Below are positions 1,707 to 54,214 of a stretch of DNA of 64,000 nucleotides, piece after piece (positions within the stretch are counted from its first letter, which is position 1; every line of letters starts with the position of its first letter). Under the pieces are notes generated by a model that saw only the letters and a list, made by a program, of their open reading frames with translations, had not been told where the DNA came from and searched no databases. The stretch lies in assembly GCF_022045235.1 (NCBI RefSeq), contig NW_027266273.1, positions 434,001 to 498,000 of the forward strand, read 5' to 3'. The stretch comes from Haliotis cracherodii. Lineage: Eukaryota. The position numbers and the translations under genes are program-made.

Positions 1707-1736
1707 TTGTCTTGGGAGGAGGAGTTGGTACAGCAA
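1707..1736 (-). CDS. Linker exon (V)AVPTPPPKT; last exon identified in the window
   Basis: 30 nt, ttttag|...|gtaagt. Confidence 0.8.
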
Positions 1737-4700
1737 CTAAAATAAAAGTGACAACATCAATTAGACATGATAAGTGAGCGAGATAGGGTTTAACAGCAAT
1801 TTGAACAGAATTTTGAAAAATGCTAACTAACTAAATCTGAATTTCAAACTATCGATACAATTATGTAAGCCCAAAATTATTCTAGTCTGAATATTTTCCT
1901 CTTATTTAGTCAGAAATGCCAGTATATGTAAATCAAGTCTATATTTTGTCAATAGCTAAAAACCTTGAAAATGTGGCTTTTAAGTTTCTGACCCGTTTGT
2001 AAGTGCATGGTTACTATCTTCAGTCAAGTTTTTACCTGGACAAAAAGAACCAAAAACTTTCTGTCTCATTTCATTCAGTTCACTGAACTCCTGAACAGTG
2101 AACCTGTAGTCATCAAGAGGACGGCTGGCAATTCCATCAATTTCCTTAGTATCTGTTAGACCAATACCAATGACATAGATATTGATGTTCTGATCTCTGG
2201 CTTTAACTGCCTCAGGCTGTACTCTTCTGGCATTGATATTGGACACACCATCAGTGATGAGAATACAGATATTTTCAACATCAGGTCGGTCTCCTGTTTC
2301 TGGTGTGTACATCTGAGTCCTCATTACATTTAGTCCACCATAGGTATTGGTACTTCCATACATATAGGGTATGTTGTCAATGGCTTTGTAAATGGCTCTC
2401 TTTTGCCCAATATACTCATTCATCTGGAACTGAATAGCAACTTTGGTACTGTAGATGACAATACCAACTCGGACATTGTCATCATCAATGTTTGCAGGGA
2501 AAAGGAAGAACTTCAAAAAGTCCTGCATAAGTCTGAAGTTGGGTTCTGTGACACTGGTAGAGGTATCCAGGATTAGCACAAGGTCCATCTTATTGCTAGA
2601 GCAGTCTGCAAACAAATTCATGAACATGGTTTGGTATGGGGGAATGAAATAGGTGTCAGAAACATGTTAGTAGAAAGTTGATGCATATATTTCATACATG
2701 TATTAATGTAAATAGAGATTATTAATATGAAACATTCATTTGTATTTTCAATAAATAGCAAAATATTGTAAAATCCCAGAAGGCACTGCAACAACATCTA
2801 TGACCCTATGTAGAAATATCTACAGTTCGACTATTACAAAAGTGATTGAAAATTAAAATGTCTGCTTGTTTGCGATATCAGTCATATTATAACAGGAGGT
2901 TATTAGTCAAGGTGAAACTGAGTTTAAAGTCATGTCCAAGAATATTTCACATACATCATGACATCCAAAATGTAACACGCTTGCAGCAAACAAACCAGTA
3001 GGAAAAATTTGATCATATATCAAGAGGAGTGATTAAGAGAGTTTGGTTTAGCATTGCTTTGAAGAGTATTTCAGGTACATCACAGCCTGTGTTTGTATCT
3101 AAGATGACTGGGCCATGCATGCCACCCTGTTACAGGTATGATCTGTAATCAGCAATAATGGGAGCCACCAGAGTCACATTCTTTAAGCCAGCAAATGGGA
3201 TTAGTGTCAGGCAGCACTTAGAAATGCTGGGAAGTTGCCTATGCAACAGTGTGCTTCCTTCCACTACATCTGCTGTATGTGCAACCCTACACTGTACGTG
3301 TATGTTATGAAGCAGAATACCATACAGAACAGAACTTTTGATCTTTATATTCCTATTTTGATGTAATGTATTATTACCATACTGATGATATGCACCAAGT
3401 AAGCTGAAGCCATATGCATCTCAAGCACTGATGAAGTAAGCCTTGCGTGCCTGAACATTGGCAACTTCATCCTGAGAGAGAGACACATTCCAGTTTGTTT
3501 TCTTGTCGTGCCCTACAGTGTTTGGGCTGTCATATTTATTTTTCCTCTTAGCACTGCTAAGCACCACCCAGAACTGCTGACTTTCACTCTTCAGTACTGT
3601 GCCACAACGAGGTGTGGACAGCAATGGAGAGTGTTAGGTCTAAGCAACGTGACCCAGATCCTCCATATAATTGTCTTATAACATGGGTCACTGATATAGG
3701 ACTGCATAGTGTTACCGGTATATTGGGTAAAACAAATATAACAAGTTTTGCTATTATTTGCATTGTTTAAATGATGCTTGCCTTCGAACTTGATTGACAA
3801 AACGGCGAAAACACGAAAGTGATAATTGTCTCACAATGTTATCTTCCCTGTATCCATAACTATAAAAAGGCGGCGACTGACCATGCTGAGTAATATTTAC
3901 TTTCGTATGTAGAAAATAGGATCTGCATGTATAATCAGTGTTAATCACTTTCAAACACTTTAGCTCCCAATATATATCGCAATATGTATTGCAATACAGT
4001 TACCTGTATCACAAAATATAGCAATACAATTTCTTTCCCAATACACAGAGTTACTGAGGACCAATGGTATCAAAGACTCCCCATAATACAATCCATTTAG
4101 TAATGATGCTACCAACCTTTATATTAATGAGAAATAACCAATTACTTGTCTCTTATAGTACAACATAATCATATTATTTCACAACAGATATTTTCTGTGC
4201 AAGATTAATTAATTGTTACAGGAATCAAGCAAGCTCATCACATTTGGTGTCAGCTTACTTACTTTTCCACCTTTTGTTATCTTATTATTTTGCTGTCCTT
4301 ACCTGTACATATATATATGCTCTCTGCCTCATGGCATTCATTCACCTGGTGAAGGAGTTAGCATATACTCAGAAATGTTGTGTTCCTCATAAAAAAGAAG
4401 TTGACATCCATATATTCTCTTCCTTAACTTACTGTAAGAGCAAATTTTTGAAAGAAACTGGAAATGGGTACTTTGTTATAAGAGAACATATCTTACCTTG
4501 TGCTTTGGGTGTTGGAGCAGGTGTTGGAGCTGGGGTAGTTGTGGTAGTAGTGGTAGTTGTAGTCGTGGTAGTAGTAGTTGTAGTTGTTGGAGGTGGTGTG
4601 GTAACTGAAATGAATAACAGAGTTCCTCACTCTTCCAATTATCAACTTGAAGTCTAAGAACAGCTTTGCAATGAAAATTATTGACAAATTGATGAAATCT

Positions 4701-7700
4701 AACCTAAACATATATTTACACATTTAGGCATACCCCAAAGGATAAAAAACACATTACTAAATGCTTTGAGCAGAGATTTTGTTGCATTCTTAACAGTAAA
4801 AACAATGTGTGAACATTTATTGTGGAGCATACTACAAACAGATAATTTGCATACATATTATCTTACTTTTTGTTTAATCTTAGTTTGACATATAAAGGAT
4901 TCCAAACTGACAACAATGGGTTAAGAATAGCATCATAGTCTGAATGATATTGATAAAAGTCTATAGCTGGAACTGGTACGTACTAGGACAAAAAGAACCA
5001 AAGACTTTCTGTCTCATTGCACTCAGTTCACTGAACTCCTGAACAGTGAACCTGTAGTCATCAAGAGGCCGGCTGGCAATTCCATCAATTTCCTTAGTAT
5101 CTGTTAGACCAATACCAATGACATAGATATTGATGTTCTGATCTCTGGCTTTAACTGCCTCAGGCTGTACTCTTCTGGCATTGATATTGGACACACCATC
5201 AGTGATGAGAATACAGATATTTTCAACATCAGGTCGGTCTCCTGTTTCTGGTGTGTACATCTGAGTCCTCATTACATTTAGTCCACCATAGGTATTGGTA
5301 CTTCCATACATATAGGGTATGTTGTCAATGGCTTTGTAAATGGCTCTCTTTTGCCCAATATACTCATTCATCTGGAACTGAATAGCAACTTTGGTACTGT
5401 AGATGACAATACCAACTCGGACATTGTCATCATCAATGTTTGCAGGGAAAAGGAAGAACTTCAAAAAGTCCTGCATGAGTCTGAAGTTGGGTTCTGTGAC
5501 ACTGGTGGAGGTATCCAGGATTAGCACAAGGTCCATCTTGGCAGTGGAACAGTCTGGAAAGACATGGAAAACTGTAACTTTGGGGGAACATTAAGTTATA
5601 ATATTGTCTTAAATGCTAATAAAGTGAGTGTGTAATTAAAAAAACTGTTGATGTTTGTTCTTTGTGCAAGATGATTGCAAAAACAAGATTGACAGAGGTG
5701 CCCATGCTTGTTTTAAGATTTGATGACATTCATTAAAGTCATCCCGATAACTGACATAAGTGTTTACTTACAAACTATGTAAGTTGAAGTCAGACAGGTG
5801 TACTATTGTCAGCATTACATAGTTTAATTTACAATACAGTGATGAATAGCCTAATTCAAAGAAATTTGTTGCTTGATTATTAATTATATTATTGCCATCA
5901 TTAATGTGTTTGTTGTTTTAATGCTGTACTCAGCAATATTACAGCTATTGTGGCACTTGCCATTGAGGCTATCAGAGAAACAGTATATAGATTTGCCTTA
6001 ATTCTCACTGTCTGAAACATCCCAAATGGATTCAGCTTAATGAATGGATGATGCATTTTTTCTTCATTAATTTCCTAATCTTAGTAATCTAGAGATAAAA
6101 ATCATGTACACTAATCTGTATGACTTCCTAAAAGATTACAGGTAGTTAGTTCTCCACTCCATCCATTAGTAGGAGTGGTTATATGAAGACTGAAGTACAT
6201 TGTCATATCAAGAATCATAACTTGTTTTATATTATCAGTATTTACAGATGTAAATGTCTGCACAATTCTGCAGACAATAAGTTAAGAAGCCATTTCAACA
6301 AACCATGACTATTCTAGTGTTGTGTCTATCTGAACTCAATTGTCAAACAGATTTATAATGAAAAGGCAGAGCTGTGAGGCCATATTTTTCTACCAGCAGT
6401 GAAGTCTACGTTCATTGTAAATACGTTCAATCATGTAAACATTTGTTTTTCATCATAGCTCTGTACCATATCAATGCTATATGATATCAGTTCTGTGTAA
6501 GAAAAGGTGACCTTACCTTTGGGTTTGGCTGGAGTTGTTGGTGGTGGGGTTGGTGGAGGAGTAACTAAAACATAACAAAGGGTTCTTACATTACAATTTG
6601 AAAATACAGGCAGTACACCTTAGAGTGCCTACTCCATACATGCTTCTAAGCTTTACAGAAAAAATATGAATGATTATAAATTCATTCCATCAGTGAATTC
6701 CTAGTTCTTTCTGTAGTTTATTTGCATCATGCCTAAAGATCTAATACTCAATTCAGATTGGCTACTTATTGCACCCATTTGTGCAGATGGACTTCCTTTC
6801 ACCTACTGCTTAGTTTCACTGAAATCATGCTTAGATCAAATAGTGCATTTGTTGATCCCGTATGGTATGTTCAAGGCATATATTCACTCTACAATAGCAA
6901 GATGAATTTTCAACAGATAGATATCAACATTATTTGATAATGCTGAAACAATACAGTTTGTCCATCACTGTTGTTATTATTTACTAACATTGAAATCAAC
7001 ATGAACAAATTTGAAGGACAGTATTACTGTCAACCTGTACAGTCTTAGAAGTATAGTGAATGTGAAAATGGACCCCAACCCAAAACCAAAATGTAAACCA
7101 GTTTGAACCACCCAGAACATCATGGAATATTTTTGCAACATGACAACTAGAATGTGTATGTACTCATAAAAACATATGTCTCCCCACACCTTCTTTTTCA
7201 TACATTAGTTCAAGTTGTTACTATAAATCTGTTTGCAAATAAAAAACCCAATAATAGCAAATTATAGCCTAGAATGATAACGGTTTCATGCAGAAATATT
7301 TATTAGCTGAAGAGTGCTGGCATGAAACAAATGCTCCTCATTTGAGACTAAGTCCAAATTGCTTCAATGGTCATTGCACATATTCAGTGTCATGCAAAAG
7401 TATTCATTCAAGCTTTGTTGAGGCCAGTAAATTAAACCCTTCCCTTGTTTAAGACTATGTCGAAATNNNNNNNNNNNNNNNNNNNNNNNNNNNNNNNNNN
7501 NNNNNNNNNNNNNNNNNNNNNNNNNNNNNNNNNNNNNNNNNNNNNNNNNNNNNNNNNNNNNNNNNNNNNNNNNNNNNNNNNNNNNNNNNNNNNNNNNNNN
7601 NNNNNNNNNNNNNNNNNNNNNNNNGGTATGTAATTAGAGGTACATACTTTGGCTATCTGATTCAATTTCTTCTGACATCATTCCAGTAGTCATAGTTATC

Positions 7701-10700
7701 AAGTTAAAGAGTATCAGAGCTTATACAAGGCTCTGTGAACTACATATAAAACAGATTTGTTTATCCAACTTTAGTTTATTCATGCCATACATGATTTTCA
7801 CTTACCTGGACAAAACGACCCAAACACTTTCTGTCTCATTGCATTCAGTTCACTGAACTCCTGAACAGTGAACCTGTAGTCATCAAGAGGCCGGCTGGCA
7901 ATTCCATCAATTTCCTTAGTATCTGTTAGACCAATACCAATGACATAGATATTGATGTTCTGATCTCTGGCTTTAACTGCCTCGGGAATGGTTCTTCTGG
8001 AATTGATATTGGACACACCATCAGTGATGAGAATACAGACATTTTCAACATCTGGGCGGTCTCCTGTTTCTGGTGTGTACATCTGAGTCCTCATTGCATT
8101 TAGTCCACCATAGGTATTGGTACTTCCATACATGTAAGGTATTTTGTCAATGGCTTTGTAAATGGCTCTCTTTTGCCCAATATACTCATTCATCTGGAAC
8201 TGAATAGCAACTTTGGTACTGTAGATGACAATACCAACTCGGACATTGTCATCATCAATGTTTGCAGGGAAAAGGAAGAATTTTAAGAAATCCAGCATGA
8301 GTAGAAAATTCTTCTTTGTGACACTGGTAGAGGTATCAAGGATGATAACAAGATCCATCTTGGCAGTGGAACAGTCTGAAATTACAAAGTCCAAATGTGA
8401 TGAGCTGAATTATTATGTGACATCTTTTTATATAGGATATTCTTTTAACCCATATATCATTATGGAAACAGAAAACAGAAATAAAGCGACAAAACCCTTT
8501 CCATAATCATACAAATCTCTGTTAAGAGCAGAGATCATTGTATGAATCTGACTATCTCATAATCATTTGTTTATCAATCACTATCAAATAGTGATCATAC
8601 CAGCCATGACTACTTTTTGTCTAAAGTTTCCCAAAATAAGTCAACGTGAAACACAAAGAGACTGCTGATTATTATAAATTAATAGTAGAACTAGAAAGGT
8701 GTTTGCATTACTTGCAAAAACAAAAGAGGCCTGTCCTCATCATTTTCTGAAAACTTTCTCATCAGAAACATATCATGAACCACTTTGACATTACCTCTCA
8801 CATGCCCAGTGCAGTACAAAGTTGAACAGAAAGTCCTATGCCTCTCAGTGCCTCAATAACAAAGTCATAAACACTGCCTAAATATCATGTATATAAAGTT
8901 TAGTGAAGTTCCAATAATAAATCCTCAATAATATATCCTTGCATATACACAACCTTTTTGGGATGTCTACTTCCCATTTTGTGACCTTGACCTTCAATGT
9001 CATCCAATCACATTGGTTGTCTCCATATGTTACAAACCATACTTCCTGAATGAAACTATCAACAAGTCTCATTTCCAGAGTGAATGACCTTCAAAGCGAC
9101 TCTGACATTTGACATAATCATGACATATGATAGGTGTTGACTTTGAGTTCATCGTAAATGATTGCAAAAGACTTTGATATTTCATGAACTAATCTGAAAT
9201 TTCATGAAATTAGAATGTTTCACATTCTGACTCCCAGTGACTTTGGCCTTATATGGAGGTCACATAAATTTGATGCGACCATCTTCCCTTAGAGATCATG
9301 TATACAAAGTTTTTTCAAATATCAATCATAAATACTCAAGTTTATTTAATGCCAAGTTCATACTGAATAACCTTCATCTTCCAGGTCATCCATTCATGTC
9401 AGAAACATTCCCCAGTGGTATATAGGCGGTATATCTGGTATTAAGTCTCTAACATCTGTCATAAACGCTTGGTTGAGAAAACCAATATTGGCGGTGAAGC
9501 TCAAATTCAAGCAAACACCACTTTTTGCAAAGTGCTTTTTTAATTATTCATGTTTTTAGTATTTTTCACTATTATCAACTAAAATCTTTCCAAGTGGAGA
9601 ACACACCAAAAATATCACATATATTATCTTTAACACTCTATTGGCACTCTAATGTTGTCGACCGCCTCCGTGGCCTAGTGGTAGAGCGTCCACCTGGAGA
9701 GCGGAAGGTCCGGGGTTCGATCCCCGGCCGCGTCATTCCAAAAGACGTTAAAAGATGGTACTTGTTGTTACCCTGTCTGGCGCTCAGCATTAAGGGGCTA
9801 AAACAAGCACTGGTCGGCTCGTAGTCTGTATACTGTGTCTGAGTGGGGTATTCATGTTAAACTGCGGCATGGTATCTCAGTGTGCTAGCACTATAAATCG
9901 GCATCAGTCCGGACTAGTACAAGCAGCCACAGACACCTGTACATGCACGTCGCTATATAAGTGCAATAATCTTGGACGCGACGTTAAACCCCATTTCACC
10001 TCAGCTCTAATGTTGTCACTAGCCTTACATTTCATGCCTATTTGGCAGCAAGTGATCTTGACCACCAATCTCAGGCAATTTCATATTCCCAAAGATCCCT
10101 ATAGTGTGTCAGTTATTGAGTGAGTGAATTTGGCTTGTTGTTGCTTTGAACAGTGTTTCAGTTATATCATGATGTGTTACCCTGATGTGGGAAAAAAGAC
10201 TGAAGTTAGGCAGGTCATATAGGTTTACAATGAGCTTGGGTATGGTGCTGACAAACCTAGAAAGAACATCAGGCCGAAATGGGATTTTGAACTCATGATT
10301 TCGAAAGTCATCTAAAATAAAAAATACCTAACTCATTCACTAGGGATCAAGTACATTGTTTGACACTTGACTCTGACACTTCATTTAAAAAAAATATATA
10401 TCCTCGCATATAAACAACATGTGTTTCTTGTTCAAAGTTTGTCTACCATCATCATTTTCAGAAGATACATGTTGTACTGTCACAACAGATTAATTATTAG
10501 CAGAGTCTAATAGACCCAAAAAAGGGAAACTTATCCACAAACAATACACTTCATACATCACTGACATTTTTCTTGTCATTTGAGCTTCTATACTGTGTGA
10601 CACTCCTTTAAGGGTCATACAGCATAAATAGTGATATAAGTTGTAGTAGTATCATGAGGGGTATCTGTGATTTTAGGCATTCCGCTGAGCCAGAGGCTAT

Positions 10701-23415: not shown

Positions 23416-23448
<33 letters not shown>

Positions 23449-44400: not shown

Positions 44401-47400
44401 TCAAACTAATTTGGGGGCAAATGTCAAATGTTTTCATAGTTAATACCAATAATTATAAATACAATAACAACATGCTGTGCACATGCAATACATTCGAGAA
44501 AACACATGTATTTCACAACTGACAAATCAAAATGCCATTTAACCTGCAATAAAAAAGGAAAACAACCCACACATTTCAACATCACAGTATAGTAATTCAT
44601 TACATAGTTTCATGTATAGAAAACACATCTATCAGAAGAAAGGTCAGGAAATTCACGAAGTGTTCAGTCAACTATCACAACAGAAAATTTGCATGCAAAA
44701 AGCATTTGTGGTTAGTAAACAGTGTATGATAATAGTACAATATATCAAATACAGAAGAAACAAGAACATTTGCCTATGACATATAACACAGAACAATACT
44801 TATCATAATATCTTCAGCATAAACCATTTTGCTTACAGATTCAACCTTTGTTCACATGTCTTACAAAATGGTGAGCAGCCTACTACCTGTAATTCTATGG
44901 ATATCAAAATCACAGTGCATTTTGCACCTGGAGTAAAATAAACCACTCAAAATTTGCTAAGGACCAAACCTTTGACTACAGATGACTACTTTAGTCTTCA
45001 GCAAATGTTGTGTAGTCTATGTGACCAGTGGCAGTTTATTAGGCAGTGAGTCCCCCAAATTACTTAAATTATTCAGAAACTATGGCTTATGCCTGAGATA
45101 TTACAGTTTTCTGAAAACACTAACAGACCTCTTATATACACACTGATTGGCATAGGAAATTATGCATCACTTTTAACTTTCTTAAAAGTTGATAAATGTA
45201 TCTGTTAATCTAATCATATGTATATTTTAGCTAATATATTGCTATTTTAGTTTTCAGTTATCCTATGGAGATTTTATCCTTTGAATGGTAATTTTAGTGT
45301 TACAGAAACAGAAATACCTCTATCAATCTCTTTATTACACATAATACTGCGAATAATTGTCATCTCCTTACATAATTCATAACAGCAACAACTGAGGTCA
45401 TGAGTGTGAATGAGTATTGTCTGTGGGAGTGCAAAGCTTGGGTAGGAACATTTCCATGAGGGAAAGCCACGACAAGCTGGGAAATAACATCCACAAAGGT
45501 ACCGGTAATGGTACGATAAACGCTGACTCATATTTACCTGTTCGTTATTTTGTAATGTCTCACTAATGTTAACCCTTTTTAATACAGGATTATTATATTA
45601 ATTGTCGGTCAATGATTTTCAGATATAGCCCTCCTATATAACTGTTTTCAATTAAAATATTTGATTCTCTTTCTAAAAAATCCACAAAAAAAATCTGGTT
45701 AAGTTTATGATTTGATATGTATGCTTCAACATGCATCTCCGTTTACCTGGATTTGATGTCACCCCAGGTGGTCCATCTCTCACTGAAAAAACGAAGTTTG
45801 AAAATATGAAAAAAGGAAATGTGGGTGAAATTTGTTGATAGATTTGGAAATCAACTGCAAGAAACAAAAATAAATACCGGTAGTCATGGGTCTCTGTAGC
45901 TAACAAACCAAAGTAATTAACAGACTTAAAATTTGTACGATTATTTTCCTGACAATAATACTGTGTTCATCTGTGAAATATACATATAACAACCAATGTA
46001 TTGAAATGATCAGAATAACAATTATAGGTATTCAGGAATTGCTTGAAAATGATCGAAGAGCGTGTCCGATGTGTTAACTCTCATTCCACAACATTGATAA
46101 TGATGTAATGAAATAATGTTTAAACTGGCATTTTAAATGTGATCCCACTATAGCAGTGGTGGACCCCATTGGTCAAATTCTACTTGTTCACAGGTCATTT
46201 CAGACCAGTAGATTAAGATTTTCAAAAGTCTTGGGGTCGTGTTTATTCCTGTATAGACCAACACAGACCATGATCTAATTTATATGAACAATATTGAAAG
46301 AGATTATTGCAGAATAGACTTTTAAAAAATGTCAAGAAGACATTTGTGAAAGAATAAAAATTGGTTTACTCTAATTGAGGAAAACAAATGATGAGGGGAA
46401 AACTAGTTTAGTTGGCCTGTGAGTAATGGAATATCATGAGAATATGTCAAATGTCCTGCCTGAGATACAAACTTTAATCCAGTGTGAGTGGTGAATGAAT
46501 CCTTTGGAAACAATTTATGTATTAAGGAATTGATATTTGTGAATAAGGACAGTTGTTTTAGACAAGACTTTATGTCCATTTCAGTTACTTTTGAAAGCTG
46601 TGATACATTAACATCATGTTAAGTGGAAAAGGTAAATAAATGTGGACTTGCTTGAAGTGGGATACATATGAGTCAATGACCGATATTACATCTGGGAAAA
46701 GTATGAGTAATAACTCTAAGTTAATAACACAAACTTACATGGCTGAATCTGCTCCACAAAGTCATCCCGGGCTGAGGCCAACTCCCCAAAGTTGTCCAGT
46801 TCATAGTAGTTGACCCCTGTAGCAATAGCCTCCAGTTCATCCGGAAATTCAAGATTGAGACCAATGGCGTAAACAAGGGCACCACTGTTCTGTAGATCCT
46901 GTGCTGCCTGAATGGTGTTGGCGACATCAATGTTGGAGTTAGAGTCAGTGACAACAATCACCATATTAGGCACCTGAGGTCGATCACCTGCTCTTCTGTT
47001 GAACATTTGCTGACGTACCAGGTTCAAGCCTGATGCAGAGTTGGCCTGAAATAATATTTCAGAGTCTGAAATAACTTGGATTATTAATCATTATTTTTCT
47101 TTGAAATAACATTTTTTTGAATGCATTCGAATAAGGCATCCAAGTCAGTACCAGAATTACCAGGAGTTAATTCCTGTTCCTAGTACACTACAGCAAGTAA
47201 GTTTAACTAATCGAAATCGATGATAAAAAAACACTTTCAAGATGTTTTAGTTTTACAAGTGTCCTATGTGAAATCTATATAAACTGTGTCTCAATTCTTT
47301 CACAAGGCCTCTATAACCATGACAATGTAGTGGGAAGGAGTGTGTGACAGATTGTAGCTTTATGCTGCAGACTTGCAATATTTCTGCTCGGGTCACGCAA

Positions 47401-50400
47401 TCCTTTGGCTGACTGCAAGAGCAATTCCCCTGCTGGGACATGATGACACACAATCAATCCAGTAACAAATTGTAACCACCTTACTCCATAAGACTGTTTC
47501 CATTCCACGTACTGATCACTGATGTCCTCCACAAAGTGAGTGAATGAAGGCACTCAATGAAGATGGTGGTTCCAAATCCAAATTTTGAGTTTTATGTCAA
47601 TGTACTTTTAGTCTCATGTTAGGCAAGGGATTCTTGGTACTCAGATGGCATTGTAAGAATAAATGAAATATAGCATTACTGAAACATTTGCACTAATTAT
47701 TCAGTATCCCACCTGTCCATCACGGTAGTTGAAGTTGATCCTGTCAATGCCGGTCATGACATCCTGTTTTGAAGCATACTGGTTTAGATTAAAGACTACT
47801 TCTGCATTGCCTCTATAAACAGCAGCTCCCACTCGCACTGCACCAGAATCAATATCTGCTCTGAAAACTGACGACTTGAGGAAGTCCAGAACTTGACTAA
47901 AGGAATTGCGCTGAATCTTGTTCGAGAAGTGAAGTAAAAACACTAGATCCAGTTGATTTCCTGTAACAAAGATGTTTAGTGAACAATCAACAGTGCAAAA
48001 AACATAATTCAGTACCAGTGGAAATATAAAAAATTATCTTTCATGGATTTATTACAGCTTTTCCACACAAGGTCAGTCGAAATAAAAAATTATTTATTCA
48101 TATGAAAGTCATTCTGCTGTCGGGTTAAAACTGCAGCTGGCTTCTTGAATCACTGATGTAGACATGGAACTTATATATTTCAGTTATTATTGTATAAGAG
48201 GAGTCTATATTACAATATCAAAACGATATTTTTATGTTGAATTTATTTCAGTAGGGGCAGGGGGCCTATGAAGTGAAAAAATATAAAATGTGTGGCCTTA
48301 TTAGAAATAAATTCAACTGTCAGTAGTTTTGAAACCTTATACATGTAGGTTTGGATTGATTAATCTTTGTCTGTAGGTGAGGTGAGGTGAAATGTGATCT
48401 AACGTCGTGTCTAAGATTATTGCACTCTTAGAGCTACTTGTACTAGTCTGGAATGATGTTGATTTTATAGTGCTAGCCCACTGAGATACCATGCCACATG
48501 AATACCCCACTCAGACACAGTATACCGACTCCAAGCCAACCAGTCCTTGTTTTAGCCCCTTAATGCTTAGCACCAGGCAGGGTAAATCAAGTACCATCTT
48601 TTAACCACTTTTGGTATGACAGGGCCGGGGATCGAACATTGGACATTCCGCTCTCCGGGCAGACGCTCTACCACTAGACCACGGAGGCTGTTTGCCTGTA
48701 GGTAGACTCATGTAAGACAAAGTCCGTAGCGTAAACATTATGAAGGAGTTTCATCCATTTTACCTTTTGACATAGCTGATAATAACGACTGATAACAATC
48801 CACACCATCGTCAATAAACCTGGTCAGCCTATTGACCATCTTTAGTCTCTTTAAGTTCTTTAAGAAAAGCATGGGACACTTAGGCATTTTGTTTCTGACA
48901 CAATTGTACCAAAATGTGGAATAAAATTGAATTTGTGATGTCCTTTTATCTTCCCCTGCAAATCTGTTTACTAATTCCAATAATGAAAAAAGTCCTTTAA
49001 AGGGCAAGTTCACACGGAAATGAACCATTTTTTCTTGTACTTTTTCCACATTAAAAGTGTTAACATAGAAGTGTCATAGACAAAAATATAAAAAACATCA
49101 TATTTAATTAACATATTTTTTGCACTAAAACGATTTATATTTTTCACATTTACCAAGTGTTCTATTTCCATAACAAAAACACCATGGCTTATGCCCCTTG
49201 CAATATGACGTCATTGGTGCCAATTGATAAACATTATGACGTCATCATGCTTTGTTAGAGCCGCTTCACGTGGTGTAGGTACAGTTTTGTGATTCTAGCA
49301 TCTCAGATGCCAGCCAGAATTGTGTTATGCTGAGTCACCCTGCGCCCGAGTGTGTCGTAGACCATGTTGTTTTACCGCAAACTGTTCCTTGATATCTTTT
49401 GCGTTGAGAATAGACAGGGGCCCAGTTGAATTGGCACCAATTACGTCATAATCTAAGGGGGATAACTCAGGCCTATTTCGCTCGTAAAACGAAGGCTTCA
49501 TAACGGCATATCACTTTCACACTATTGTGAGCTTCCCACTTTCACTGTGAAAAAAATGAGTGTATATTTTCAAACACAGATACTAACTAATTCTAAAATT
49601 GCGTTTTGTTTAGAAAAAGAAAGAAAGTGATTTTTGCGTGTACACTTCCCCTTTAAAGTAACATATTTCCTGTATTAGATGCCTGTGTGTCTATTAATTT
49701 CATGCAAGACATTGACCTGATATCGATTAGGGGCCGGGTTACCTTACTTCCTTCCGAATCCAAAATTCTACAATCATAAGAGTACATTAGCAGGAAAAGA
49801 TCCTCATAAATCGCCAACATTTCACGGTATAAATTTGCAAATTCTTAGCTTGGTCATTCATCAGAGACCCAGCTTTACAGAGGAAATATGGCAGGTCAAA
49901 AGAGTCAATGCCAATAAAAAAACCCTCCTTTTCATATTTAATTATTTCATTTGACCAACAACAAAAATAAATCAGAAATCACTGAATTTTTATTTCATGT
50001 AGAAAAGAGGCCATAACTGGAAGATATTCTGCTGTGGAAGACCCCCCCCCCCCCCCCCCCCCCTTCATTTGCTTCTTAATCTGTAGAAATTAGAACAACC
50101 GTGCCGATACCTGTAAAGATATTTATACGTGAGTCCAACGTGATTCAAACATGCATTTCGAAACTTCCCGCATACATTTGGTAGCGGCTTTTGGCAAGCA
50201 GGCGACAATTATTTTTTTTGTCAATTGTGCAAGGGAGGTTACTCTTACTTGCAAAGCTACTTCCAAGTTGGAATATCAATTGAGCTATTGTGACACAGAT
50301 TACAGAGTTCGAACACAGAGTTACAAATATTTTCGAAACGGCATATTAGTTTCTTTTACTTGTTATCTTTTACAACATAACTTTGCAAAATTAAAATAAA

Positions 50401-53400
50401 GATTCATTAGTGCATATATGCCGATATGCATATTAGGTAAATACACAAACCTTGAATTGAGCCTGATGCACCGCCATCGCCGTTACCGCCTTTCCCACCT
50501 AAAACAGTATTGTGATCAGTAACTGACAGTAAGTGTGAAAGAACTGAATCAAAACTAGCTGTGTAAAATAAAACAGTAACATTATAAGTAACACACAAAG
50601 TATTCACTATTCAATTGAGCCCGAAAGAATTCCCACATTTTACCAACAAGCCCAAGTCAAAAACAAGTCAAATCCTAACATGGCGTATAAATGTACTGCA
50701 GTACGAAAGAAATTTTCCAATATGTTCAAGATAAAAGTTCAAACTGACATTGTTTTTACTCTATTTCCACGCGGAACCGCCTGGATGAGTTAAATTCTTG
50801 TTTGAGAACGACATATCACTACAACAGTGTGCACAATCAATGAATGATGCTGTTACAGTTTAGCGTTAACTTTATCCTATTATTTTTCATCCTAAAACAG
50901 ACGCCGTCCACACTTATGCAGTCAGACATAAAACATATTTTTCGAATATGCAAATAACGATACAAATGAAACCTTTATGAAACGAGAGATTCGGTAATAC
51001 CGGATACGGTTATTAACAAGGATAGTGAGGCTATTGACCTCGTAGAGCAGAAAACTACGTACATATTGTGGAGTAAACTACGTCACTCATGAAGGCGAGG
51101 TCAGCAGCATCGTTGATGAGAAACTTATGGTCATCTGCTGGGTCTGTCACAAGTGTGTCGATCTCCCCTTCATTTTGTACACCGACACCAACGGCGGCGA
51201 TCTTGATCCCTGCAGCCTTAATTTTTTTGGCTTCGCCTGCGCTTCGTCTGGCCTTGACCTGTGAATTGCCACCAGTCAGGAGGAGGACGTACTTTTCGGC
51301 GTCTGCGCGGGCACCCTTAAAGAACCTCTGTGTCTGGATGAAGGCCTTGGAGAAGTCGCGACGCCCCCTTTCCTGTGGAGCCGACAATATTCCCCGCTGG
51401 ACCGAGTCCAGAGTCCTGAACTTGCCGAACCCGAACCTAGGAAGGAAATGGTTGTTATGTCGTTGGTTTGGTTGTAACAATCGTTAGCGTGATAAAAAAA
51501 ATCCAACTAACAATAAGATGCATATAACGCCTCTTTGAACAGCATTGCAGTTACATTCATACGTCCCAGTTAAATGTGTGAGGAGAAACCGATGAATCCG
51601 GGTGGGGGTGGGGGGTTGTAATACGTACTTATTTCTTGCCCTTGAACTGGCGCCTATCAGGCCGACTCTGACGTTACCGGTATCAACGCTGGCGAACTCA
51701 ACGACATCGTTAGCAAACTGCCTGAGAGCAGTGTAGACCGTTGGTGGAGCTGCACTATCTAATATTATCACCAGGTCAATCTTTGTCTGTCCACAGCCTG
51801 GTGAGATAAAACATGAAAGACATTGCAACATTCCGCATTCTACATTTGCTACAGGCACAGTCAAACGAGGATGACAATGTCGGACATAACGAAACATCGT
51901 GCAATAACGAACGCATCAATGTTTGGTGTCTTGCCATACATGTCTAATGTATAAGATAGCCACGGGTTGCTCACGTACTTGTTTATTAGTCTTAAATCTT
52001 CTGGCAGTGCTAAAATTTCGAATTTCGAATATACCGAATTCATGTTTAGTTCCCATGAAGTTCCCTTTTATTACTTTTACATTTGGATCTCCTGAGTAAA
52101 AAAAATCCAGAATCTGGACAGTTACTGTTGCGACGTTTGTATAGAAATATAGGCATTCGTAAAGTGTGTAAGTCTGAACGATTTCACTGGGAACGGTACC
52201 GTCAGGATTAACAACATCGCACAGTAGTACCTTTTGTAAGGATGTGGTCCACATGTCAAATTTGAGAACATTTATAATTAGAACATACATCTGGAAATGT
52301 AACTTTCTATTTACACTTTGGAAAGGGTTTAGTTTAACTCACCTGAAATTCCATTTGGCACAACTGGCAATGTCCCCTCAGGAAACAAATCTGAATCGAA
52401 AATGAGGACGCCGGTTTTTTCAAAGGGAATATTGAAACCTCAAATAAAGTAGTCAGCAAAATACGTAACTGTATTTTTTAAATGTGGATAAATCATCTAA
52501 TTTAAGGACCCTACAGCCTCTCTTTGTAGAAAGATATATTCCTGACCGCTCGGGTTAATACTGGGAGTATGTCAAGCTTACTGAACTAACAATTCTGATA
52601 GGAGTTGGTTGATGTTTATGATTATATACAAACTCATTATTTCAAAAGCCCGTATTCCTGCTTTGGCTGTCCTGGCCTCTTTGCATGTTTAACTTGGAAG
52701 ATAACCCTTTGTGCTTTGAAGTTTGACGTAGTCCTACTGTAGATTACATACTTCTCAGACACCTTTTTTATTAATTTGGAACCGAGTGTTTTAGCGTTCT
52801 CAGTAGTGTTCCCCCGGAAGATAGACGTTTCACTGCATATGAAGTATGATTATGGAATACAATCAAATTTGCTTTTGATAAAAATAAGTTAAATTTAATG
52901 CAACGTAAGTTTGGGTGGTTATGTCGTTTGCTTAAATTAACGCCGAAAGCTTCGATTCCCACATAAGTAGAATTTGTCAAACCCTTTCAAGGTGTCCACC
53001 AGCCCAAATAATGCTGGACAATTGCGAACTATTGCCTAATAAATACCATACTCACTCAAGACCAAAAGTTAAAAATAGTTAAAATAATTGCAATGAAATC
53101 TCGTTAAATCGGATGGCACTGTCCCAAGCTTAATCGTGTGGACTAACGAATTATTGTTCTGATTAATTATGTTTGTGAATTTGGAAGTCGCCTGGAAAAT
53201 GTGCTTTGCCGACTGAAGACGTCTGTCGAACGTCGCAGCTTCATCTTCATTTTCGGAAAACAAATGCGCACCTCACTATGCCAACTGGCTCATGGAACTG
53301 TTGAAGTTGTCCTTGGCTAAAATACACTTAATGTGAAAAATGTCTGTCATGCTTTTTGGGGGCAAACATATTTATGTGCATAACGTGACATTTTTCAACT

Positions 53401-54214
53401 GTGTCAACATTTGTATTCCATTACATTGACATACACCTATCGTTAATAAATCCAATTTTGTTAATTCATTGGCATAAATGTGCATTTATGATCCCATCGT
53501 GACATTGGCAACCGTTACTCTCCATCAAGGTAGCATTGTTTAGGCATCAAGTCCTTGAGAAGTGACCGTCATGAATTTCGATTGCAACTGTTACAGCAAA
53601 AGAAAACTGCCCGAGCAGCGTTCATGATCCCGATATCGTGGGAAGACGACCTCCAGCGGAAACTAATTCTAACACTTGAACTTAACGTTCATTCTAACCC
53701 AAATAGGAATTACCCTGATTGTTTACAAGGATGGTTGAATGAACACATATATGTGCTGGAGTCGTCCTGCTTCCTTCATAAACAGACAAGACCACTCCAA
53801 ATCAAGTATTTGTTTAGTGGCCTAAACAAGATGTAATGAAAGCTAAAATGAGTTTAAGGAAAATAACTTATGCGATTAATAAATATAGTTGTTTTGTTAG
53901 TAATATGATTAATCATTTGCTACTGACAATCTTGGTGTATTTAGTCAACAAATAACATAAGACAAACTGACCGTATGCAATTTAAGAATGCGATTAGCTT
54001 ATAAAATAATGATAGATGTTAAAAAATTGGATTTAAAGTGAAAGCGCTTGGTTGAATGAATAAATTCTCAACGCGACATAATATAAACAAAACATTGTCC
54101 AGCGTTATGAAAGTTAGATATGTAAAACATTGCGTGGTACTTACTGTCCTGGGCTAGACAACAAGCCAGAAGCCCCAATATCACAGTCAGCAAATGGCGA
54201 CACATTGTTGCCAT
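1707..54214 (-). CDS. Giant secreted multi-vWA protein (22 vWA domains plus Pro/Thr linkers; matrilin/collagen VI alpha3 N-terminus-like), 46 coding exons, 3'-incomplete
   Basis: Hand-spliced model with GT-AG introns. Exon lengths sum to 13,903 nt and keep frame. Starts with a signal peptide. The last exon in the window ends at a phase-1 donor, so the gene continues beyond position 1. Confidence 0.85.
2036..2605 (-). CDS. vWA22
   Basis: 570 nt, phase 1-1. Confidence 0.9.
4497..4604 (-). CDS. Poly-Thr/Pro linker exon (I)TTPPP(T)nPAPTPAPTPKAQ
   Basis: 108 nt, tttcag|...|gtaaga. Confidence 0.85.
4984..5553 (-). CDS. vWA21
   Basis: 570 nt, phase 1-1, donor gtacgt. Confidence 0.9.
6517..6564 (-). 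CDS. Pro-rich linker exon (V)TPPPTPPPTTPAKPK
   Basis: 48 nt, ttttag|...|gtaagg. Confidence 0.8.
7467..7624. other. Assembly gap (158 N)
   Basis: Run of N. Confidence 1.
7806..8375 (-). CDS. vWA20
   Basis: 570 nt, phase 1-1. Confidence 0.9.
9660..10004 (+). mobile_element. tRNA-derived SINE, full length and young
   Basis: Pol III A box tggcctagtgg (9671-9681) and B box ggttcgatcc (9714-9723); perfect 13-bp TSD ctctaatgttgtc (9647-9659, 10005-10017); homologous copies elsewhere in the window. The central segment resembles the Meta/MESC SINE domain as I recall it (unverified). Confidence 0.9.
10886..10990 (-). CDS. Poly-Thr linker exon (I)TTPPP(T/S)nPLLTTKAQ
   Basis: 105 nt, tttcag|...|gttggt. 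Confidence 0.8.
11752..12321 (-). CDS. vWA19
   Basis: 570 nt, phase 1-1. Confidence 0.9.
12538..12582 (-). CDS. Pro-rich linker exon (V)PPPTPPPTVPAKPK
   Basis: 45 nt, tttctag|...|gtgggt. Confidence 0.8.
12810..13379 (-). CDS. vWA18
   Basis: 570 nt; CDSARMD...DTSTS...ICP. Confidence 0.9.
14314..14580. repeat. Minisatellite, ~90 bp x3
   Basis: ttgtacacaaaacag recurs at 14314, 14403 and 14494. Confidence 0.9.
14818..15125. repeat. Minisatellite, ~48 bp x ~6.5, two alternating variants
   Basis: aggaaacaaa recurs every ~48 bp. Confidence 0.85.
16223..16261 (-). CDS. Linker exon (I)PIPVTPPPKKRP
   Basis: 39 nt, ctttcag|...|gtaagt. Confidence 0.8.
18120..18698 (-). CDS. vWA17
   Basis: 579 nt; DCTDTKMD...DASTS...RKGCP. 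Confidence 0.9.
19371..19406 (-). CDS. Linker exon (A)IMIPLPGGERK
   Basis: 36 nt, cttttcag|...|gtatga. Confidence 0.7.
20373..20939 (-). CDS. vWA16
   Basis: 567 nt; ECSSTRLDLAFLIDASTS...FCT. Confidence 0.9.
21337..21378 (-). CDS. Linker exon (I)PTTTLPPPATTSK
   Basis: 42 nt, tttttcag|...|gtgtgt. Confidence 0.75.
21572..21830 (+). mobile_element. Degraded SINE copy of the same family
   Basis: Collinear decayed matches (ctgcctccttggtgtagtag...gcattgtatctcagtatgct). Confidence 0.5.
22278..22844 (-). CDS. vWA15
   Basis: 567 nt; DCADAMLD...DASTS...FCP; donor gtgagt. Confidence 0.9.
22922..23339. repeat. Intronic ~140-bp direct duplication (22922-23061 / 23198-23339)
   Basis: tggcaaatctgtgatttgaacccaagatca...ccaatcagtttcaaaactg occurs twice. 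Confidence 0.85.
23411..23448. repeat. (CT)n microsatellite
   Basis: Read directly from the sequence. Confidence 0.9.
23511..24119 (-). CDS. vWA14 with fused Pro-rich linker (basic: AKKARRKG)
   Basis: 609 nt; DASTS MIDAS; ends PVPAKPLPTLPPILD. Confidence 0.9.
24172..24430 (-). mobile_element. tRNA-derived SINE, same family, 3'-truncated
   Basis: Reverse-complement match to the head and body of 9660-9940. Confidence 0.8.
25157..25228 (-). CDS. Thr/Pro linker exon (V)HSTTAPTTTTTTTPLPTIPAKLD
   Basis: 72 nt, ttttcaag|...|gtaaga. Confidence 0.8.
25541..26107 (-). CDS. vWA13 (type A)
   Basis: 567-nt array copy. Confidence 0.9.
26349..26960 (-). CDS. vWA12 (type B)
   Basis: 612-nt array copy. 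Confidence 0.9.
27201..27287 (-). CDS. Poly-Thr linker exon (87 nt, one Thr>Ser)
   Basis: Array copy. Confidence 0.85.
27583..28149 (-). CDS. vWA11 (type A)
   Basis: 567-nt array copy. Confidence 0.9.
28391..29002 (-). CDS. vWA10 (type B)
   Basis: 612-nt array copy. Confidence 0.9.
29243..29329 (-). CDS. Poly-Thr linker exon (87 nt)
   Basis: Same splice sites as 31285-31386, 5 Thr codons shorter. Confidence 0.85.
29625..30191 (-). CDS. vWA9 (type A)
   Basis: 567 nt, near-identical to 31683-32249. Confidence 0.9.
30433..31044 (-). CDS. vWA8 (type B)
   Basis: 612 nt, near-identical to 32491-33102. Confidence 0.9.
31285..31386 (-). CDS. Poly-Thr mucin-like linker exon (102 nt)
   Basis: tttcag|...|gtaagt; VTTTLAP(T)nIPTTTTPEVD. 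Confidence 0.85.
31683..32249 (-). CDS. vWA7 (array type A)
   Basis: 567 nt; DCSYAKLD...DTSTS...FCS. Confidence 0.9.
32491..33102 (-). CDS. vWA6 (array type B, fused Pro/Thr linker)
   Basis: 612-nt phase 1-1 exon; DSSTS MIDAS; ends PVVTTPVPRTLPPKVQ. Confidence 0.9.
33476..33520 (-). CDS. Linker exon (V)ERPSVPVTTQPKSD
   Basis: 45 nt, tttcag|...|gtaagt. Confidence 0.75.
35558..36124 (-). CDS. vWA5 (canonical MIDAS DSSTS/T/TDG)
   Basis: 567-nt phase 1-1 exon, Cys at both ends. Confidence 0.9.
37267..37290 (-). CDS. 24-nt linker exon (F)RAKGKTD
   Basis: ttttcttttcag|...|gtaagt. Confidence 0.7.
37429..37808 (-). CDS. vWA4 second half
   Basis: ctctag| phase 2; NGDRDGVPNGVILVTD and VYTVGVG; donor gtgagt. 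Confidence 0.85.
38494..38665. mobile_element. TA-flanked MITE (Tc1/mariner-pogo type)
   Basis: TA|cagtaaactacggttataacgaac ... gttcgttataaacatagtttactg|TA. Confidence 0.8.
38915..39301. mobile_element. Degraded hAT-like MITE
   Basis: TIRs aggggtggcacgat / attgtgtcacccct with subterminal (g/c)atac motifs; the TSD is not clean. Confidence 0.45.
39447..39624 (-). CDS. vWA4 first half (ADIIFAIYFNPK..., degenerate MIDAS); not in the ORF track
   Basis: Hand translation includes ADVDSGNVRLGFF; phase-2 donor gtatgt matches the next exon. Confidence 0.8.
40232..40258 (-). CDS. 27-nt linker exon (G)PACGASLA
   Basis: cttttcag|...|gtaagt, phase 1-1. Confidence 0.65.
42184..42261 (-). CDS. Pro/Thr/Lys linker exon SSTPRKPPTRGPQTTKPTGVVTPKP
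   Basis: 78 nt, ctccag|...|gtcagt. Confidence 0.75.
42486..43061 (-). CDS. vWA3, Lys/Arg-rich, degenerate MIDAS (ADIAIVYQFGKS)
   Basis: 576-nt phase 1-1 exon; GDRPGVPNAVILITD and IFTIGLG. Confidence 0.85.
44227..44265 (-). CDS. Linker exon (E)DIPGADEPLTLA
   Basis: 39 nt, ttttcag|...|gtgagt, phase 1-1. Confidence 0.7.
45747..45782 (-). CDS. Linker exon (L)RDGPPGVTSNP
   Basis: 36 nt, tttttcag|...|gtaaac, phase 1-1. Confidence 0.7.
46739..47045 (-). CDS. vWA2 second half
   Basis: tttcag| phase 0; GDRPQVPNMVIVVTD and VYAIGL; donor gtaagt. Confidence 0.85.
47713..47960 (-). CDS. vWA2 first half (LDLVFLLHFSNK..., degenerate MIDAS)
   Basis: ttacag| acceptor; ADIDSGAVRVG; phase-0 donor gtggga. 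Confidence 0.8.
48379..48690 (-). mobile_element. tRNA-derived SINE, same family as 9660-10004
   Basis: Reverse-complement match; (tcacc)n tail; 13-bp TSD tttg(t/c)ctgtaggt with one mismatch. Confidence 0.85.
49001..49652. mobile_element. Non-autonomous Kolobok-like DNA transposon
   Basis: TTAA|agggcaagttcacacg ... cgtgtacacttcccct|TTAA; AG..CT termini; internal inverted repeats at ~49189-49225 and ~49429-49465. Confidence 0.7.
50451..50498 (-). CDS. Gly-rich linker exon (C)GKGGNGDGGASGSIQ
   Basis: 48 nt, ttttag|...|gtttgt; the junction codon T+GT gives the C-terminal Cys of vWA1. Confidence 0.75.
51063..51436 (-). CDS. vWA1 second half
   Basis: cctag| phase-2 acceptor; motifs YVLLLTGG and IAAVGVG; phase-1 donor gtacgt. 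Confidence 0.8.
51629..51797 (-). CDS. vWA1 first half (GCGQTKIDLVIILDSAAPP..., degenerate MIDAS)
   Basis: vWA strand motifs DLVIILD and NVRVGLI; accag| acceptor, phase-2 donor gtacgt. Confidence 0.8.
52343..52390 (-). CDS. Linker exon (N)LFPEGTLPVVPNGIS
   Basis: 48 nt, ttcag|...|gtgagt, phase 1-1, open frame. Confidence 0.75.
54145..54214 (-). CDS. Start/signal-peptide exon MATMCRHLLTVILGLLACCLA-QD
   Basis: ttctttgtttcag|actgaATG...GACA|gtaagt. Hydrophobic core with a small-residue cleavage site; phase-1 donor. Confidence 0.85.

What the first reader, a model, noticed from the sequence alone, without database searches (positions are those of the whole stretch)
1707..54214. Giant secreted beads-on-a-string vWA protein: at least 22 vWA domains, mucin-like spacers, no collagen helix
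Seen: the scattered vWA ORFs splice into one frame of about 4,630 aa or more after a single signal peptide. It has 22 vWA domains and Pro/Thr linkers, with no Gly-X-Y or EGF modules in the window. Established: collagen VI alpha3 has about a dozen vWA domains, matrilins and mussel byssal PTMP1 have two, and vWA proteins occur in gastropod mucus and adhesives. Inference: a multivalent, divalent-cation-dependent cross-linking scaffold with O-glycosylated spacers, for example in pedal mucus/glue or another secreted matrix. Automated pipelines would probably fragment it or label it 'collagen alpha(VI)-like'.
Basis: partly seen in the sequence, partly recalled or inferred. Interest (0 to 1): 0.8.

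Follow-up and report, generated by a model that had tools for sequence, protein, structure and literature searches.

The report
Giant secreted multi-vWA matrix gene
The window holds the front third of one very long mollusc gene for a secreted chain of metal-binding vWA domains joined by threonine/proline spacers. It is a very large member of a known family, and its transcripts carry an unexpected stop-containing exon after the 16th domain.

Summary
On the minus strand the window has one signal-peptide exon (54214-54145) and 22 vWA units (Pfam PF00092). Eighteen are single phase-1/phase-1 exons with an intact MIDAS motif and a terminal Cys pair. Twelve Pro/Thr mini-exons lie between them. There is no Gly-X-Y run or EGF module in the window.

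RNA contigs from four runs confirm five GT-AG junctions exactly where predicted (V14-V15-PT-V16, and into V17).

Two corrections:
- The same contigs show a unique 527-nt exon (19897-19371) between V16 and V17 with stops in every frame. The assembled isoform therefore encodes about 3,300 aa and 16 vWA domains. The roughly 4,500-aa reading needs this exon skipped, and no skipping joint was seen.
- The gene does not end at 1707. Same-strand phase-1 exons continue for 119 kb to a stop with AATAAA signals. The locus totals about 53 vWA units, a Gly/Pro-rich exon and four EGF exons near the 3' end.

Exons downstream of the stop exon are under purifying selection (dN/dS 0.11-0.17), so some isoform translates them.

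Relatives with 8-22 vWA domains, some with the same Thr/Pro spacers, are already in public annotations as 'collagen alpha-3(VI)-like'. This is a very large member of a known kind. Tissue and role (mucus, shell matrix or connective tissue) remain untested.

The parts
54145..54214 (-). Signal-peptide exon (ATG at 54214; ends in phase 1 before GTAAGT)
   Evidence: MATMCRHLLTVILGLLACCLAQD, with an in-frame TGA just upstream. It is the only convincing signal-peptide exon in the 224 kb scanned.
51629..51797 (-). vWA N1, first exon (MIDAS-dead: DSAAP)
   Evidence: hit to my vWA HMM, AG/GT ends, joins in frame with the signal-peptide exon.
51063..51436 (-). vWA N1, second exon
   Evidence: PF00092 E 4.7e-11. 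Donor T|GTACGT.
50451..50522 (-). Candidate Gly-rich linker exon. Something like it is needed, because direct N1b+N2a splicing gives TGA.
   Evidence: phase 1-1 open exon. No transcript evidence.
47713..47960 (-). vWA N2, first exon
46739..47045 (-). vWA N2, second exon
   Evidence: PF00092 E 4.5e-13
42486..43061 (-). vWA N3 (single exon, MIDAS-dead QGSVD, no Cys)
   Evidence: PF00092 E 1.3e-27
39447..39624 (-). vWA N4, first exon
37429..37808 (-). vWA N4, second exon
   Evidence: PF00092 E 1.2e-14
35558..36124 (-). vWA V5 (567 nt, phase 1-1, MIDAS intact)
   Evidence: PF00092 E 1.1e-47
33476..33520 (-). Linker mini-exon ERPSVPVTTQPKSD
32491..33102 (-). vWA V6, with an in-exon Pro/Thr tail VVTTPVPRTLPPKVQ
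31683..32249 (-). vWA V7
31285..31386 (-). Poly-Thr/Pro mini-exon (TTTLAPT17IPTTTTPEVD)
30433..31044 (-). vWA V8 (100% aa identical to V6)
29625..30191 (-). vWA V9 (100% aa identical to V7)
29243..29329 (-). Poly-Thr/Pro mini-exon
28391..29002 (-). vWA V10
27583..28149 (-). vWA V11
27201..27287 (-). Poly-Thr/Pro mini-exon
26349..26960 (-). vWA V12
   Evidence: PF00092 E 3.1e-42
25541..26107 (-). vWA V13
   Evidence: PF00092 E 6.6e-43
25157..25228 (-). Thr/Pro mini-exon
23511..24119 (-). vWA V14. Donor at 23511 confirmed by RNA contigs.
   Evidence: joint 22844|23511 in all four runs
22278..22844 (-). vWA V15. Both ends confirmed by RNA contigs.
   Evidence: joints 22844|23511 and 21378|22278
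21337..21378 (-). Pro/Thr mini-exon PTTTLPPPATTSK. Both ends confirmed by RNA contigs.
20373..20939 (-). vWA V16, the most divergent canonical domain (53-63% to the others). It has a weak donor, GTTTGC.
   Evidence: The downstream intron 20372-19898 is retained in contigs.
19371..19897 (-). Unexpected 527-nt exon, unique in the genome, with stops in all frames. The in-frame reading is DPSEEAYVHLDIHLHPAPPSSAATSNFDITHILT, then stop.
   Evidence: joint 18698|19371 in four runs and 19897|20373 in three. One 2,266-nt contig carries V15-PT-V16-this exon-V17. Also.
18120..18698 (-). vWA V17. Acceptor confirmed by RNA contigs.
   Evidence: The loose end at 18120 matches the next mini-exon in 29 of 30 letters.
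16223..16261 (-). Pro-rich mini-exon PIPVTPPPKKRP
12810..13379 (-). vWA V18
12538..12582 (-). Pro/Thr mini-exon
11752..12321 (-). vWA V19
10886..10990 (-). Poly-Thr/Pro mini-exon
7806..8375 (-). vWA V20
7467..7624 (.). Assembly gap, inside the intron between V20 and the next mini-exon
   Evidence: The frame does not depend on it.
6517..6564 (-). Pro/Thr mini-exon
4984..5553 (-). vWA V21
4497..4604 (-). Poly-Thr/Pro mini-exon (TTPPPT18PAPTPAPTPKAQ)
2036..2605 (-). vWA V22
   Evidence: PF00092 E 2.1e-40
1707..1736 (-). Pro-rich mini-exon. It is the last exon in the window, and the gene continues to the left of the window.

Best explanation
The window holds the 5' third of one long minus-strand transcription unit of about 173.6 kb. 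It runs from the signal-peptide exon at 54214 to a TGA about 118.9 kb left of the window start. It encodes a secreted matrix protein with collagen-VI/matrilin-type vWA domains and no triple helix.

The gene is built from symmetric phase-1 cassettes: vWA exons of about 570 nt, Pro/Thr mini-exons of 30-108 nt, one Gly/Pro-rich exon and EGF exons. Any subset of these stays in frame.

The domains with an intact MIDAS and a Cys at each end would act as repeated metal-dependent binding beads. The Thr/Pro spacers are probably O-glycosylated and would keep the beads apart. This is inferred, not shown.

In the RNA sampled, the assembled isoform includes a stop-bearing exon after V16. It therefore encodes about 3,300 aa with 16 vWA domains. 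Longer forms, with all 22 window domains and up to about 53 in the whole locus, would need that exon skipped. The conserved coding capacity of the downstream exons says some such form is made.
For: Domains, signal peptide and phases:
- Domains and phases.
- MIDAS and Cys pattern.
- Only one good signal-peptide exon in 224 kb.

Transcripts:
- RNA contigs from 4 runs (3 studies, 2 organism labels) show five GT-AG joints at the predicted sites. One 2,266-nt contig spans V15-PT-V16-stop exon-V17.
- The share of words held by the best runs (0.37-0.41) equals the exon fraction of the query, about 0.40.
- The stop exon is unique in the genome and closed in all frames, and the only minus-strand AATAAA between 17,961 and 21,212 lies outside it, at 18877-18872.

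Locus beyond the window:
- The array continues on the same strand with the same phases to a stop followed by AATAAA signals.
- The next gene beyond it is a C2H2 zinc-finger gene.
- Paralogous exons downstream of the stop exon have dN/dS 0.11-0.17, the same as upstream exons.
- Exons V19-V22 are 92-99% identical while their flanking introns do not align.

Relatives:
- The closest solved relatives are collagen VI alpha3 and PTMP1.
Against: - No contig shows V16 joined directly to V17, so the long isoform is inferred, not seen.
- Contigs cannot prove that one molecule spans the whole locus.
- A transcript with a premature stop about 40 exons before its end should be an NMD target, yet it is the abundant assembled form.
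- Only 6 kb of the 173 kb could be checked against RNA.
- The N1-N2 junction needs an unverified linker exon.
- Tissue of expression is unknown.
Confidence: 0.6

Rival explanations
1. There are two or more tandem genes rather than one. Gene A runs from the signal peptide through V16 and its 34-aa tail. Gene B starts at V17. The joined contigs would then reflect read-through transcription, or an assembler merging overlapping transcript ends.
For: - The stop-bearing exon lies exactly between V16 and V17.
- V16 is the most divergent canonical domain, and sequence families shift there: V17 is 78-81% identical to V18-V27 but about 70% to V6-V15.
- Weak coverage runs past the 19371 donor to about 18,900, near the only AATAAA in that region at 18877-18872.
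- The tool itself warns that a contig across two genes shows no single transcript.
Against: - The only in-frame ATG before the 19371 donor gives MIPLPGGERK, which has no signal peptide. No other signal-peptide exon was found.
- The only joint into V17 comes from this exon, at a depth like that of neighbouring exons.
- The exon has a strong acceptor and donor and no poly(A) signal inside it.
Confidence: 0.22
2. One reading: a constitutive single open frame carries all 22 or more vWA domains, and the 527-nt exon is a minor or aberrant splice form.
For: - All exons are phase-compatible, and skipping the exon gives 4,522 aa.
- Downstream exons are under purifying selection.
Against: - The exon is included in contigs of all four runs, at depths equal to or above the flanking vWA exons.
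- No skipping joint is listed.
- Contigs drop rare variants, so the rare form is the skipped one, if it exists.
Confidence: 0.13
3. The domain count is inflated by the assembly. On this reading the four 2,042-bp units (V6-V13) are an over-expanded or polymorphic tandem array.
For: The units are 98.9-99.6% identical, introns included. The proteins V6=V8=V10=V12 and V7=V9=V11=V13 are identical.
Against: The copies differ at 9-23 positions and in poly-Thr length (17, 12 and 8+S+3 Thr), so they are distinct sequences and not one copy printed four times.
Confidence: 0.1

Closest known systems
Collagen VI alpha3 N-terminal vWA array (solved chain 9han_C; fish col6a3 models with up to 22 vWA, e.g. 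P0082)
   Same: - Tandem vWA domains, each encoded by a symmetric phase-1 exon.
- Best solved-structure match: E 3.7e-100 over four stretches.
- Secreted protein.
- Exon symmetry allows isoforms of variable length.
   Different: - No Gly-X-Y triple helix anywhere in the 224 kb examined.
- Poly-Thr/Pro mini-exons lie between the domains.
- About 53 vWA units in the whole locus.
Mollusc VWA-containing proteins without a triple helix (Pinctada nacre VWAPs, PMC5597905)
   Same: - The paper reports expanded VWA protein families in molluscs, with collagen-like vWA domains but no triple helix.
- It proposes that they cross-link matrix. RNAi against six of them disturbs nacre.
   Different: Those proteins are much smaller. 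Some carry chitin-binding domains, and none was seen here. A shell-matrix role for this gene is untested.
Sinanodonta woodiana 'COL6A' hypothetical protein (P0077, KAL3854705.1)
   Same: - 64% identity to V12.
- The same bead-and-spacer layout: 8 vWA domains separated by Thr/Pro stretches.
   Different: - 2,044 aa with 8 domains.
- Ends in SRCR and toxin-like modules, not EGF/vWA.
- A bivalve protein and not an orthologue (at most 65% identity).
Haliotis vWA-EGF proteins (P0078 H. rufescens LOC124110407, 3,005 aa; P0312 H. cracherodii, 5,189 aa)
   Same: Abalone genes with runs of near-identical vWA domains joined by short Thr/Pro linkers, plus EGF modules and a last vWA.
   Different: - Paralogues on another chromosome (at most 63% identity).
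- They carry dozens of EGF repeats; this locus has four.
Mussel byssal PTMP1 (4cn8)
   Same: Secreted mollusc protein with tandem vWA domains. Second-best solved match, E 4.8e-35.
   Different: Only two vWA domains and no spacers. Its collagen-binding role has not been tested for this gene.
Amphioxus LOC144905190 (P0079, 6,024 aa, 21 vWA stretches)
   Same: A giant multi-vWA secreted protein outside the vertebrates. One cluster member is labelled 'biological adhesion'.
   Different: 37% identity, from a different phylum. No orthology is claimed.

Membership tests
vWA domain (Pfam PF00092) | Profile match above the gathering score | tested here: met
   all ten ORFs tested scored 43.7-162.9 bits against a cut-off of 23.8. 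My own HMM finds 22 units in the window.
vWA domain (Pfam PF00092) | MIDAS residues D-x-S-x-S, T and D, needed for metal-dependent ligand binding | tested here: met
   V5-V22 all read D,S,S,T,D. N3 reads QGSVD and N1 reads DSAAP, so those N-terminal domains are MIDAS-dead. Actual metal binding was not tested.
Collagen VI / FACIT collagens | Gly-X-Y triple-helical domain | tested here: not met
   the only run of five or more G-X-Y in six frames of 224 kb is a Gly-rich 15-mer at 50455-50499.
Matrilin | vWA domain(s) followed by EGF repeats | tested here: inconclusive
   There is no EGF in the window. Four EGF exons (PF00008, E 3e-10 to 4e-8) interleave with the last vWA units 102-118 kb left of the window. 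Whether they share a transcript with the window exons is not shown.
Matrilin | C-terminal coiled-coil oligomerisation module | not tested
   The last exon ends ...SSCTITSDQPAGGELEGSRG then stop, which is too short for a coiled coil. No coiled-coil prediction was run.
Gel-forming mucin | vWD/C8/TIL assemblies and long PTS domains | tested here: not met
   The spacers are 10-45 aa. The ten largest non-vWA ORFs of the fetched region sent to Pfam gave no vWD hit. Smaller ORFs were not all scanned.
Secreted protein | N-terminal signal peptide | tested here: met
   a basic n-region (R), a 13-residue hydrophobic core, then CLA-QD. This was read by eye and a simple scan. No SignalP was available.

The most novel reading that the evidence does not exclude
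All of about 53 vWA units, the Thr/Pro spacers, the Gly/Pro-rich module and the four EGF domains are joined in one secreted polypeptide of roughly 11,000 aa. That would be the longest vWA array I found any record of. Inclusion or skipping of the 527-nt stop exon would then act as a splice switch between a 16-domain form and the giant form.
Probability: 0.3. Interest if true: 0.55.

Novelty: new member of a known kind. Interest (0 to 1): 0.4.

Why it matters
Multi-vWA proteins without a collagen helix are a large and little-studied part of mollusc matrices, found in shell, byssus and glue. This locus is an extreme case. It is built from interchangeable in-frame cassettes, with very recent internal duplications and exon-only homogenisation.

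It could serve as a model for how repeat number and spacer length are tuned in a matrix protein. It could also show how a stop-carrying exon sets protein length.

For annotation, it warns that exon-phase logic alone over-predicts the open frame.

Tried and rejected
- **The protein-atlas search:** closed for new sequences.
- **Joined spliced model:** All searches used single exons or stored database proteins.
- **Looking for an annotated orthologue:** I used a long Haliotis paralogue as the query and ran tblastn of the best hits on the locus. Only paralogues appeared, at 71% identity or less. A model longer than 5,259 aa would have been outside the length range.
- **Single-exon word searches:** these returned only genomic single-exon fragments for this species, so they gave no isoform evidence.
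- **Stop exon as a transposon:** rejected, because it has a single genome match.
- **Second signal peptide:** the scan found none that is convincing. The candidate MSSVYVCILCMLVVA, about 76.2 kb left of the window, has a poor context.
- **Gly/Pro-rich exon:** no Pfam or PDB relative.
- **Literature:** searches for abalone mucus vWA proteins found nothing specific. The slug-glue paper (PMC6124484) is not held.
- **Species check:** using P0312 failed on a length limit. 'Black abalone' rests on earlier scan notes only.


Full report
**Place and layout.** The window is G000:C10:434001-498000 of a 1.18-Gb, 80-contig genome. Earlier scan notes call it black abalone; I did not verify this. Best protein hits are molluscan, mostly gastropod. 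Everything described lies on the minus strand.

**Observation.**
- Stop-to-stop ORFs and Pfam show 22 vWA units between 51797 and 2036.
- Eighteen of them (V5-V22) are single exons of 567-612 nt. Each is bounded by a polypyrimidine-AG acceptor and a GT donor, and always in phase 1...TGT CCA G|gt ... ag|AC TGT....
- The four N-terminal units have a different exon structure. Three are split, and their donors split a Cys-like codon as T|GT.
- Of the two I checked (N1, N3), both have lost the MIDAS motif.
- The exon 54214-54145 starts just after an in-frame TGA and encodes MATMCRHLLTVILGLLACCLAQD. It ends in phase 1 before GTAAGT and joins the first vWA exon in frame.
- A scan of 224 kb for Met-hydrophobic-core exons with a phase-1 donor found no other convincing signal peptide.
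- Between the vWA exons lie twelve mini-exons of 30-108 nt. All are phase 1-1 and encode Pro/Thr stretches. Five have runs of 7-18 Thr written with mixed ACA/ACT/ACC/ACG codons, so they are coding rather than plain microsatellite.
- Five vWA exons also carry a 14-15-aa Pro/Thr tail.
- No frame holds five or more Gly-X-Y, and no EGF pattern occurs in the window.
- The gap 7467-7624 is intronic, and the frame does not depend on it.

**Transcripts.**
- Runs X1-X4 hold 0.37-0.41 of the sampled words of 18000-27000. That is the exon fraction of the stretch (about 0.40), so they look like RNA.
- I laid contigs of X1, X2, X5 and X6 (three studies, two organism labels) on 18100-24099. This gave five joints, all CT..AC on the plus strand, which is GT..AG on the minus strand: 23511|22844, 22278|21378, 21337|20939, 20373|19897 and 19371|18698.
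- The ends of V14, V15, the 42-nt mini-exon, V16 and V17 are therefore exactly as predicted.
- The loose end beyond 18120 matches the next mini-exon (16261-16223) in 29 of 30 letters.

**The surprise.**
- Two of the joints define an extra exon, 19897-19371 (527 nt; 537 nt in organism A because of a 10-nt indel).
- It has a strong acceptor and donor and is unique in the genome.
- It has many stops in all three frames. Read in phase from V16 it gives DPSEEAYVHLDIHLHPAPPSSAATSNFDITHILT, then stop.
- One 2,266-nt contig carries V15-PT-V16-this exon-V17.
- The intron 20372-19898 is also retained in contigs, at depths near those of the exons. That form stops after 27 more codons.
- No joint from 20373 to 18698 is listed.
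- The assembled isoforms therefore encode the signal peptide, 16 vWA domains and a short tail, about 3,290-3,310 aa. My exon chain with this exon skipped gives 4,522 aa in the window.
- Direct N1b-N2a splicing makes TGA. A Gly-rich phase 1-1 exon at 50522-50451 could sit between them, but it is unverified.

**Are the downstream exons coding?**
- V17-V22 are intact.
- Paralogue pairs among them show dN/dS 0.11-0.17, the same as pairs upstream of the stop exon.
- V19-V22 are 92-99% identical as exons, while 300 nt of flanking intron on either side do not align.
- This argues that some isoform translates them.
- The only in-frame start before the 19371 donor would give MIPLPGGERK with no signal peptide. 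Skipping the exon is therefore a more natural route to translation than a second gene.

**Beyond the window.**
- I fetched 140 kb to the left and 20 kb to the right. The array goes on, same strand and same phases.
- First come 16 more canonical vWA exons with intact MIDAS (V23-V38; one divergent unit is interspersed).
- Then comes a 630-nt phase 1-1 exon of GPDGxP-like repeats with no Pfam or PDB relative.
- Then come ten Cys-less vWA exons with a degenerate MIDAS, each followed by a Pro/Thr mini-exon.
- Last come about five vWA units interleaved with four EGF exons (PF00008).
- The final exon ends ...GSRG then TGA about 118.9 kb left of the window start. AATAAA signals follow 420-460 nt later.
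- Nothing vWA-like lies further out on either side in the fetched region. The next gene to the left is a C2H2 zinc-finger gene.
- The locus is therefore about 173.6 kb with about 53 vWA units.

**Relatives.**
- A full HMMER search with V12 found 758 representatives at E<=1e-30.
- The closest are a Sinanodonta 'COL6A' protein with 8 vWA and the same Thr/Pro spacers, and a Haliotis rufescens vWA-EGF protein.
- Proteins with 19-22 vWA stretches already exist in annotations of amphioxus, fishes, lamprey and a sponge.
- None of the long mollusc proteins retrieved is an orthologue; identity on the locus is 71% or less.
- The closest solved structures are collagen VI alpha3 and byssal PTMP1.
- PMC5597905 reports expanded mollusc VWA protein families that lack triple helices. 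These sit in nacre and disturb it when knocked down.

**Mechanism.**
- Shown: a secretion signal, 18 MIDAS-complete Cys-bracketed domains in the window, spacer exons, expression, and correct splicing at six junctions.
- Inferred: metal-dependent multivalent binding, O-glycosylated extended spacers, and variable length through cassette choice.
- Tissue and partners are unknown. Pedal mucus, shell matrix and connective tissue are all open.

**Limits.**
- Contigs show presence, not absence or linkage.

**Verdict.** This is a real and expressed gene, and a very large member of the mollusc collagen-VI-like vWA protein kind. The single-frame claim needs an unobserved exon skip, and the gene is three times longer than the window shows.

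Noticed in passing
window 19371-19897 (minus): A unique 527-nt exon with stops in all frames is included in RNA contigs of four runs. Organism A carries a 10-nt insertion behind 19490. The upstream intron 20372-19898 is retained at near-exon depth.
   Followed up: yes
L007:3686-5359 (about 34.6-36.3 kb left of the window start, minus strand): A 111-bp tandem array of 15.1 copies, 95% alike. At least 11 units hold a 48-nt phase 1-1 candidate mini-exon (IDTLTTLPTPTPPST) flanked by ctctag and gtaggg, with 63-nt 'introns'. It is either a micro-exon spacer array or an intronic minisatellite.
   Followed up: partly
L011:4318-4947 (about 75.1-75.7 kb left of the window start, minus strand): A 630-nt phase 1-1 exon of GPDGxP(I/V)-type repeats, about 210 aa, with no Pfam or PDB match. 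It lies between the canonical and the Cys-less vWA blocks. A TAA follows its weak donor directly.
   Followed up: partly
L016:864-1064, L016:7356-7592, L017:2300-2443, L017:4067-4360 (minus): Four EGF exons (PF00008), all phase 1-1, interleave with the last vWA units of the locus.
   Followed up: yes
window 24919-33102: Four tandem units of 2,042-2,058 bp, each holding two vWA exons and one poly-Thr exon. The first three are 98.9-99.6% identical, introns included, and the fourth is 87% identical. Poly-Thr length differs between copies.
   Followed up: partly
window 2036-12321: Exons V19-V22 are 92-99% identical, while 300 nt of flanking intron on each side do not align (about 45% identity). 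dN/dS between them is about 0.15.
   Followed up: partly
window 51063 / 47960: Splicing N1b directly to N2a would create TGA. A Gly-rich phase 1-1 exon at 50522-50451 could lie between them.
   Followed up: partly
about 41.9-42.5 kb and 77.7-78.3 kb left of the window start: One Cys-less vWA exon of the distal type sits inside the canonical block. It is 94% identical in protein to the first exon of the distal block, so a segment was copied across about 36 kb.
   Followed up: no
L017:7047-7748 (minus); L018:7120-8148; L019:1477-3525: A reverse-transcriptase ORF lies in an intron near the 3' end of the locus. A Tc1/mariner-type transposase ORF and a C2H2 zinc-finger gene lie beyond the gene's end.
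   Followed up: partly
window 18872-18877: This is the only minus-strand AATAAA between 17,961 and 21,212. It lies about 490 nt past the 19371 donor. Weak contig coverage runs from the donor to about 18,900, so it may be an alternative 3' end for the short isoform.
   Followed up: no
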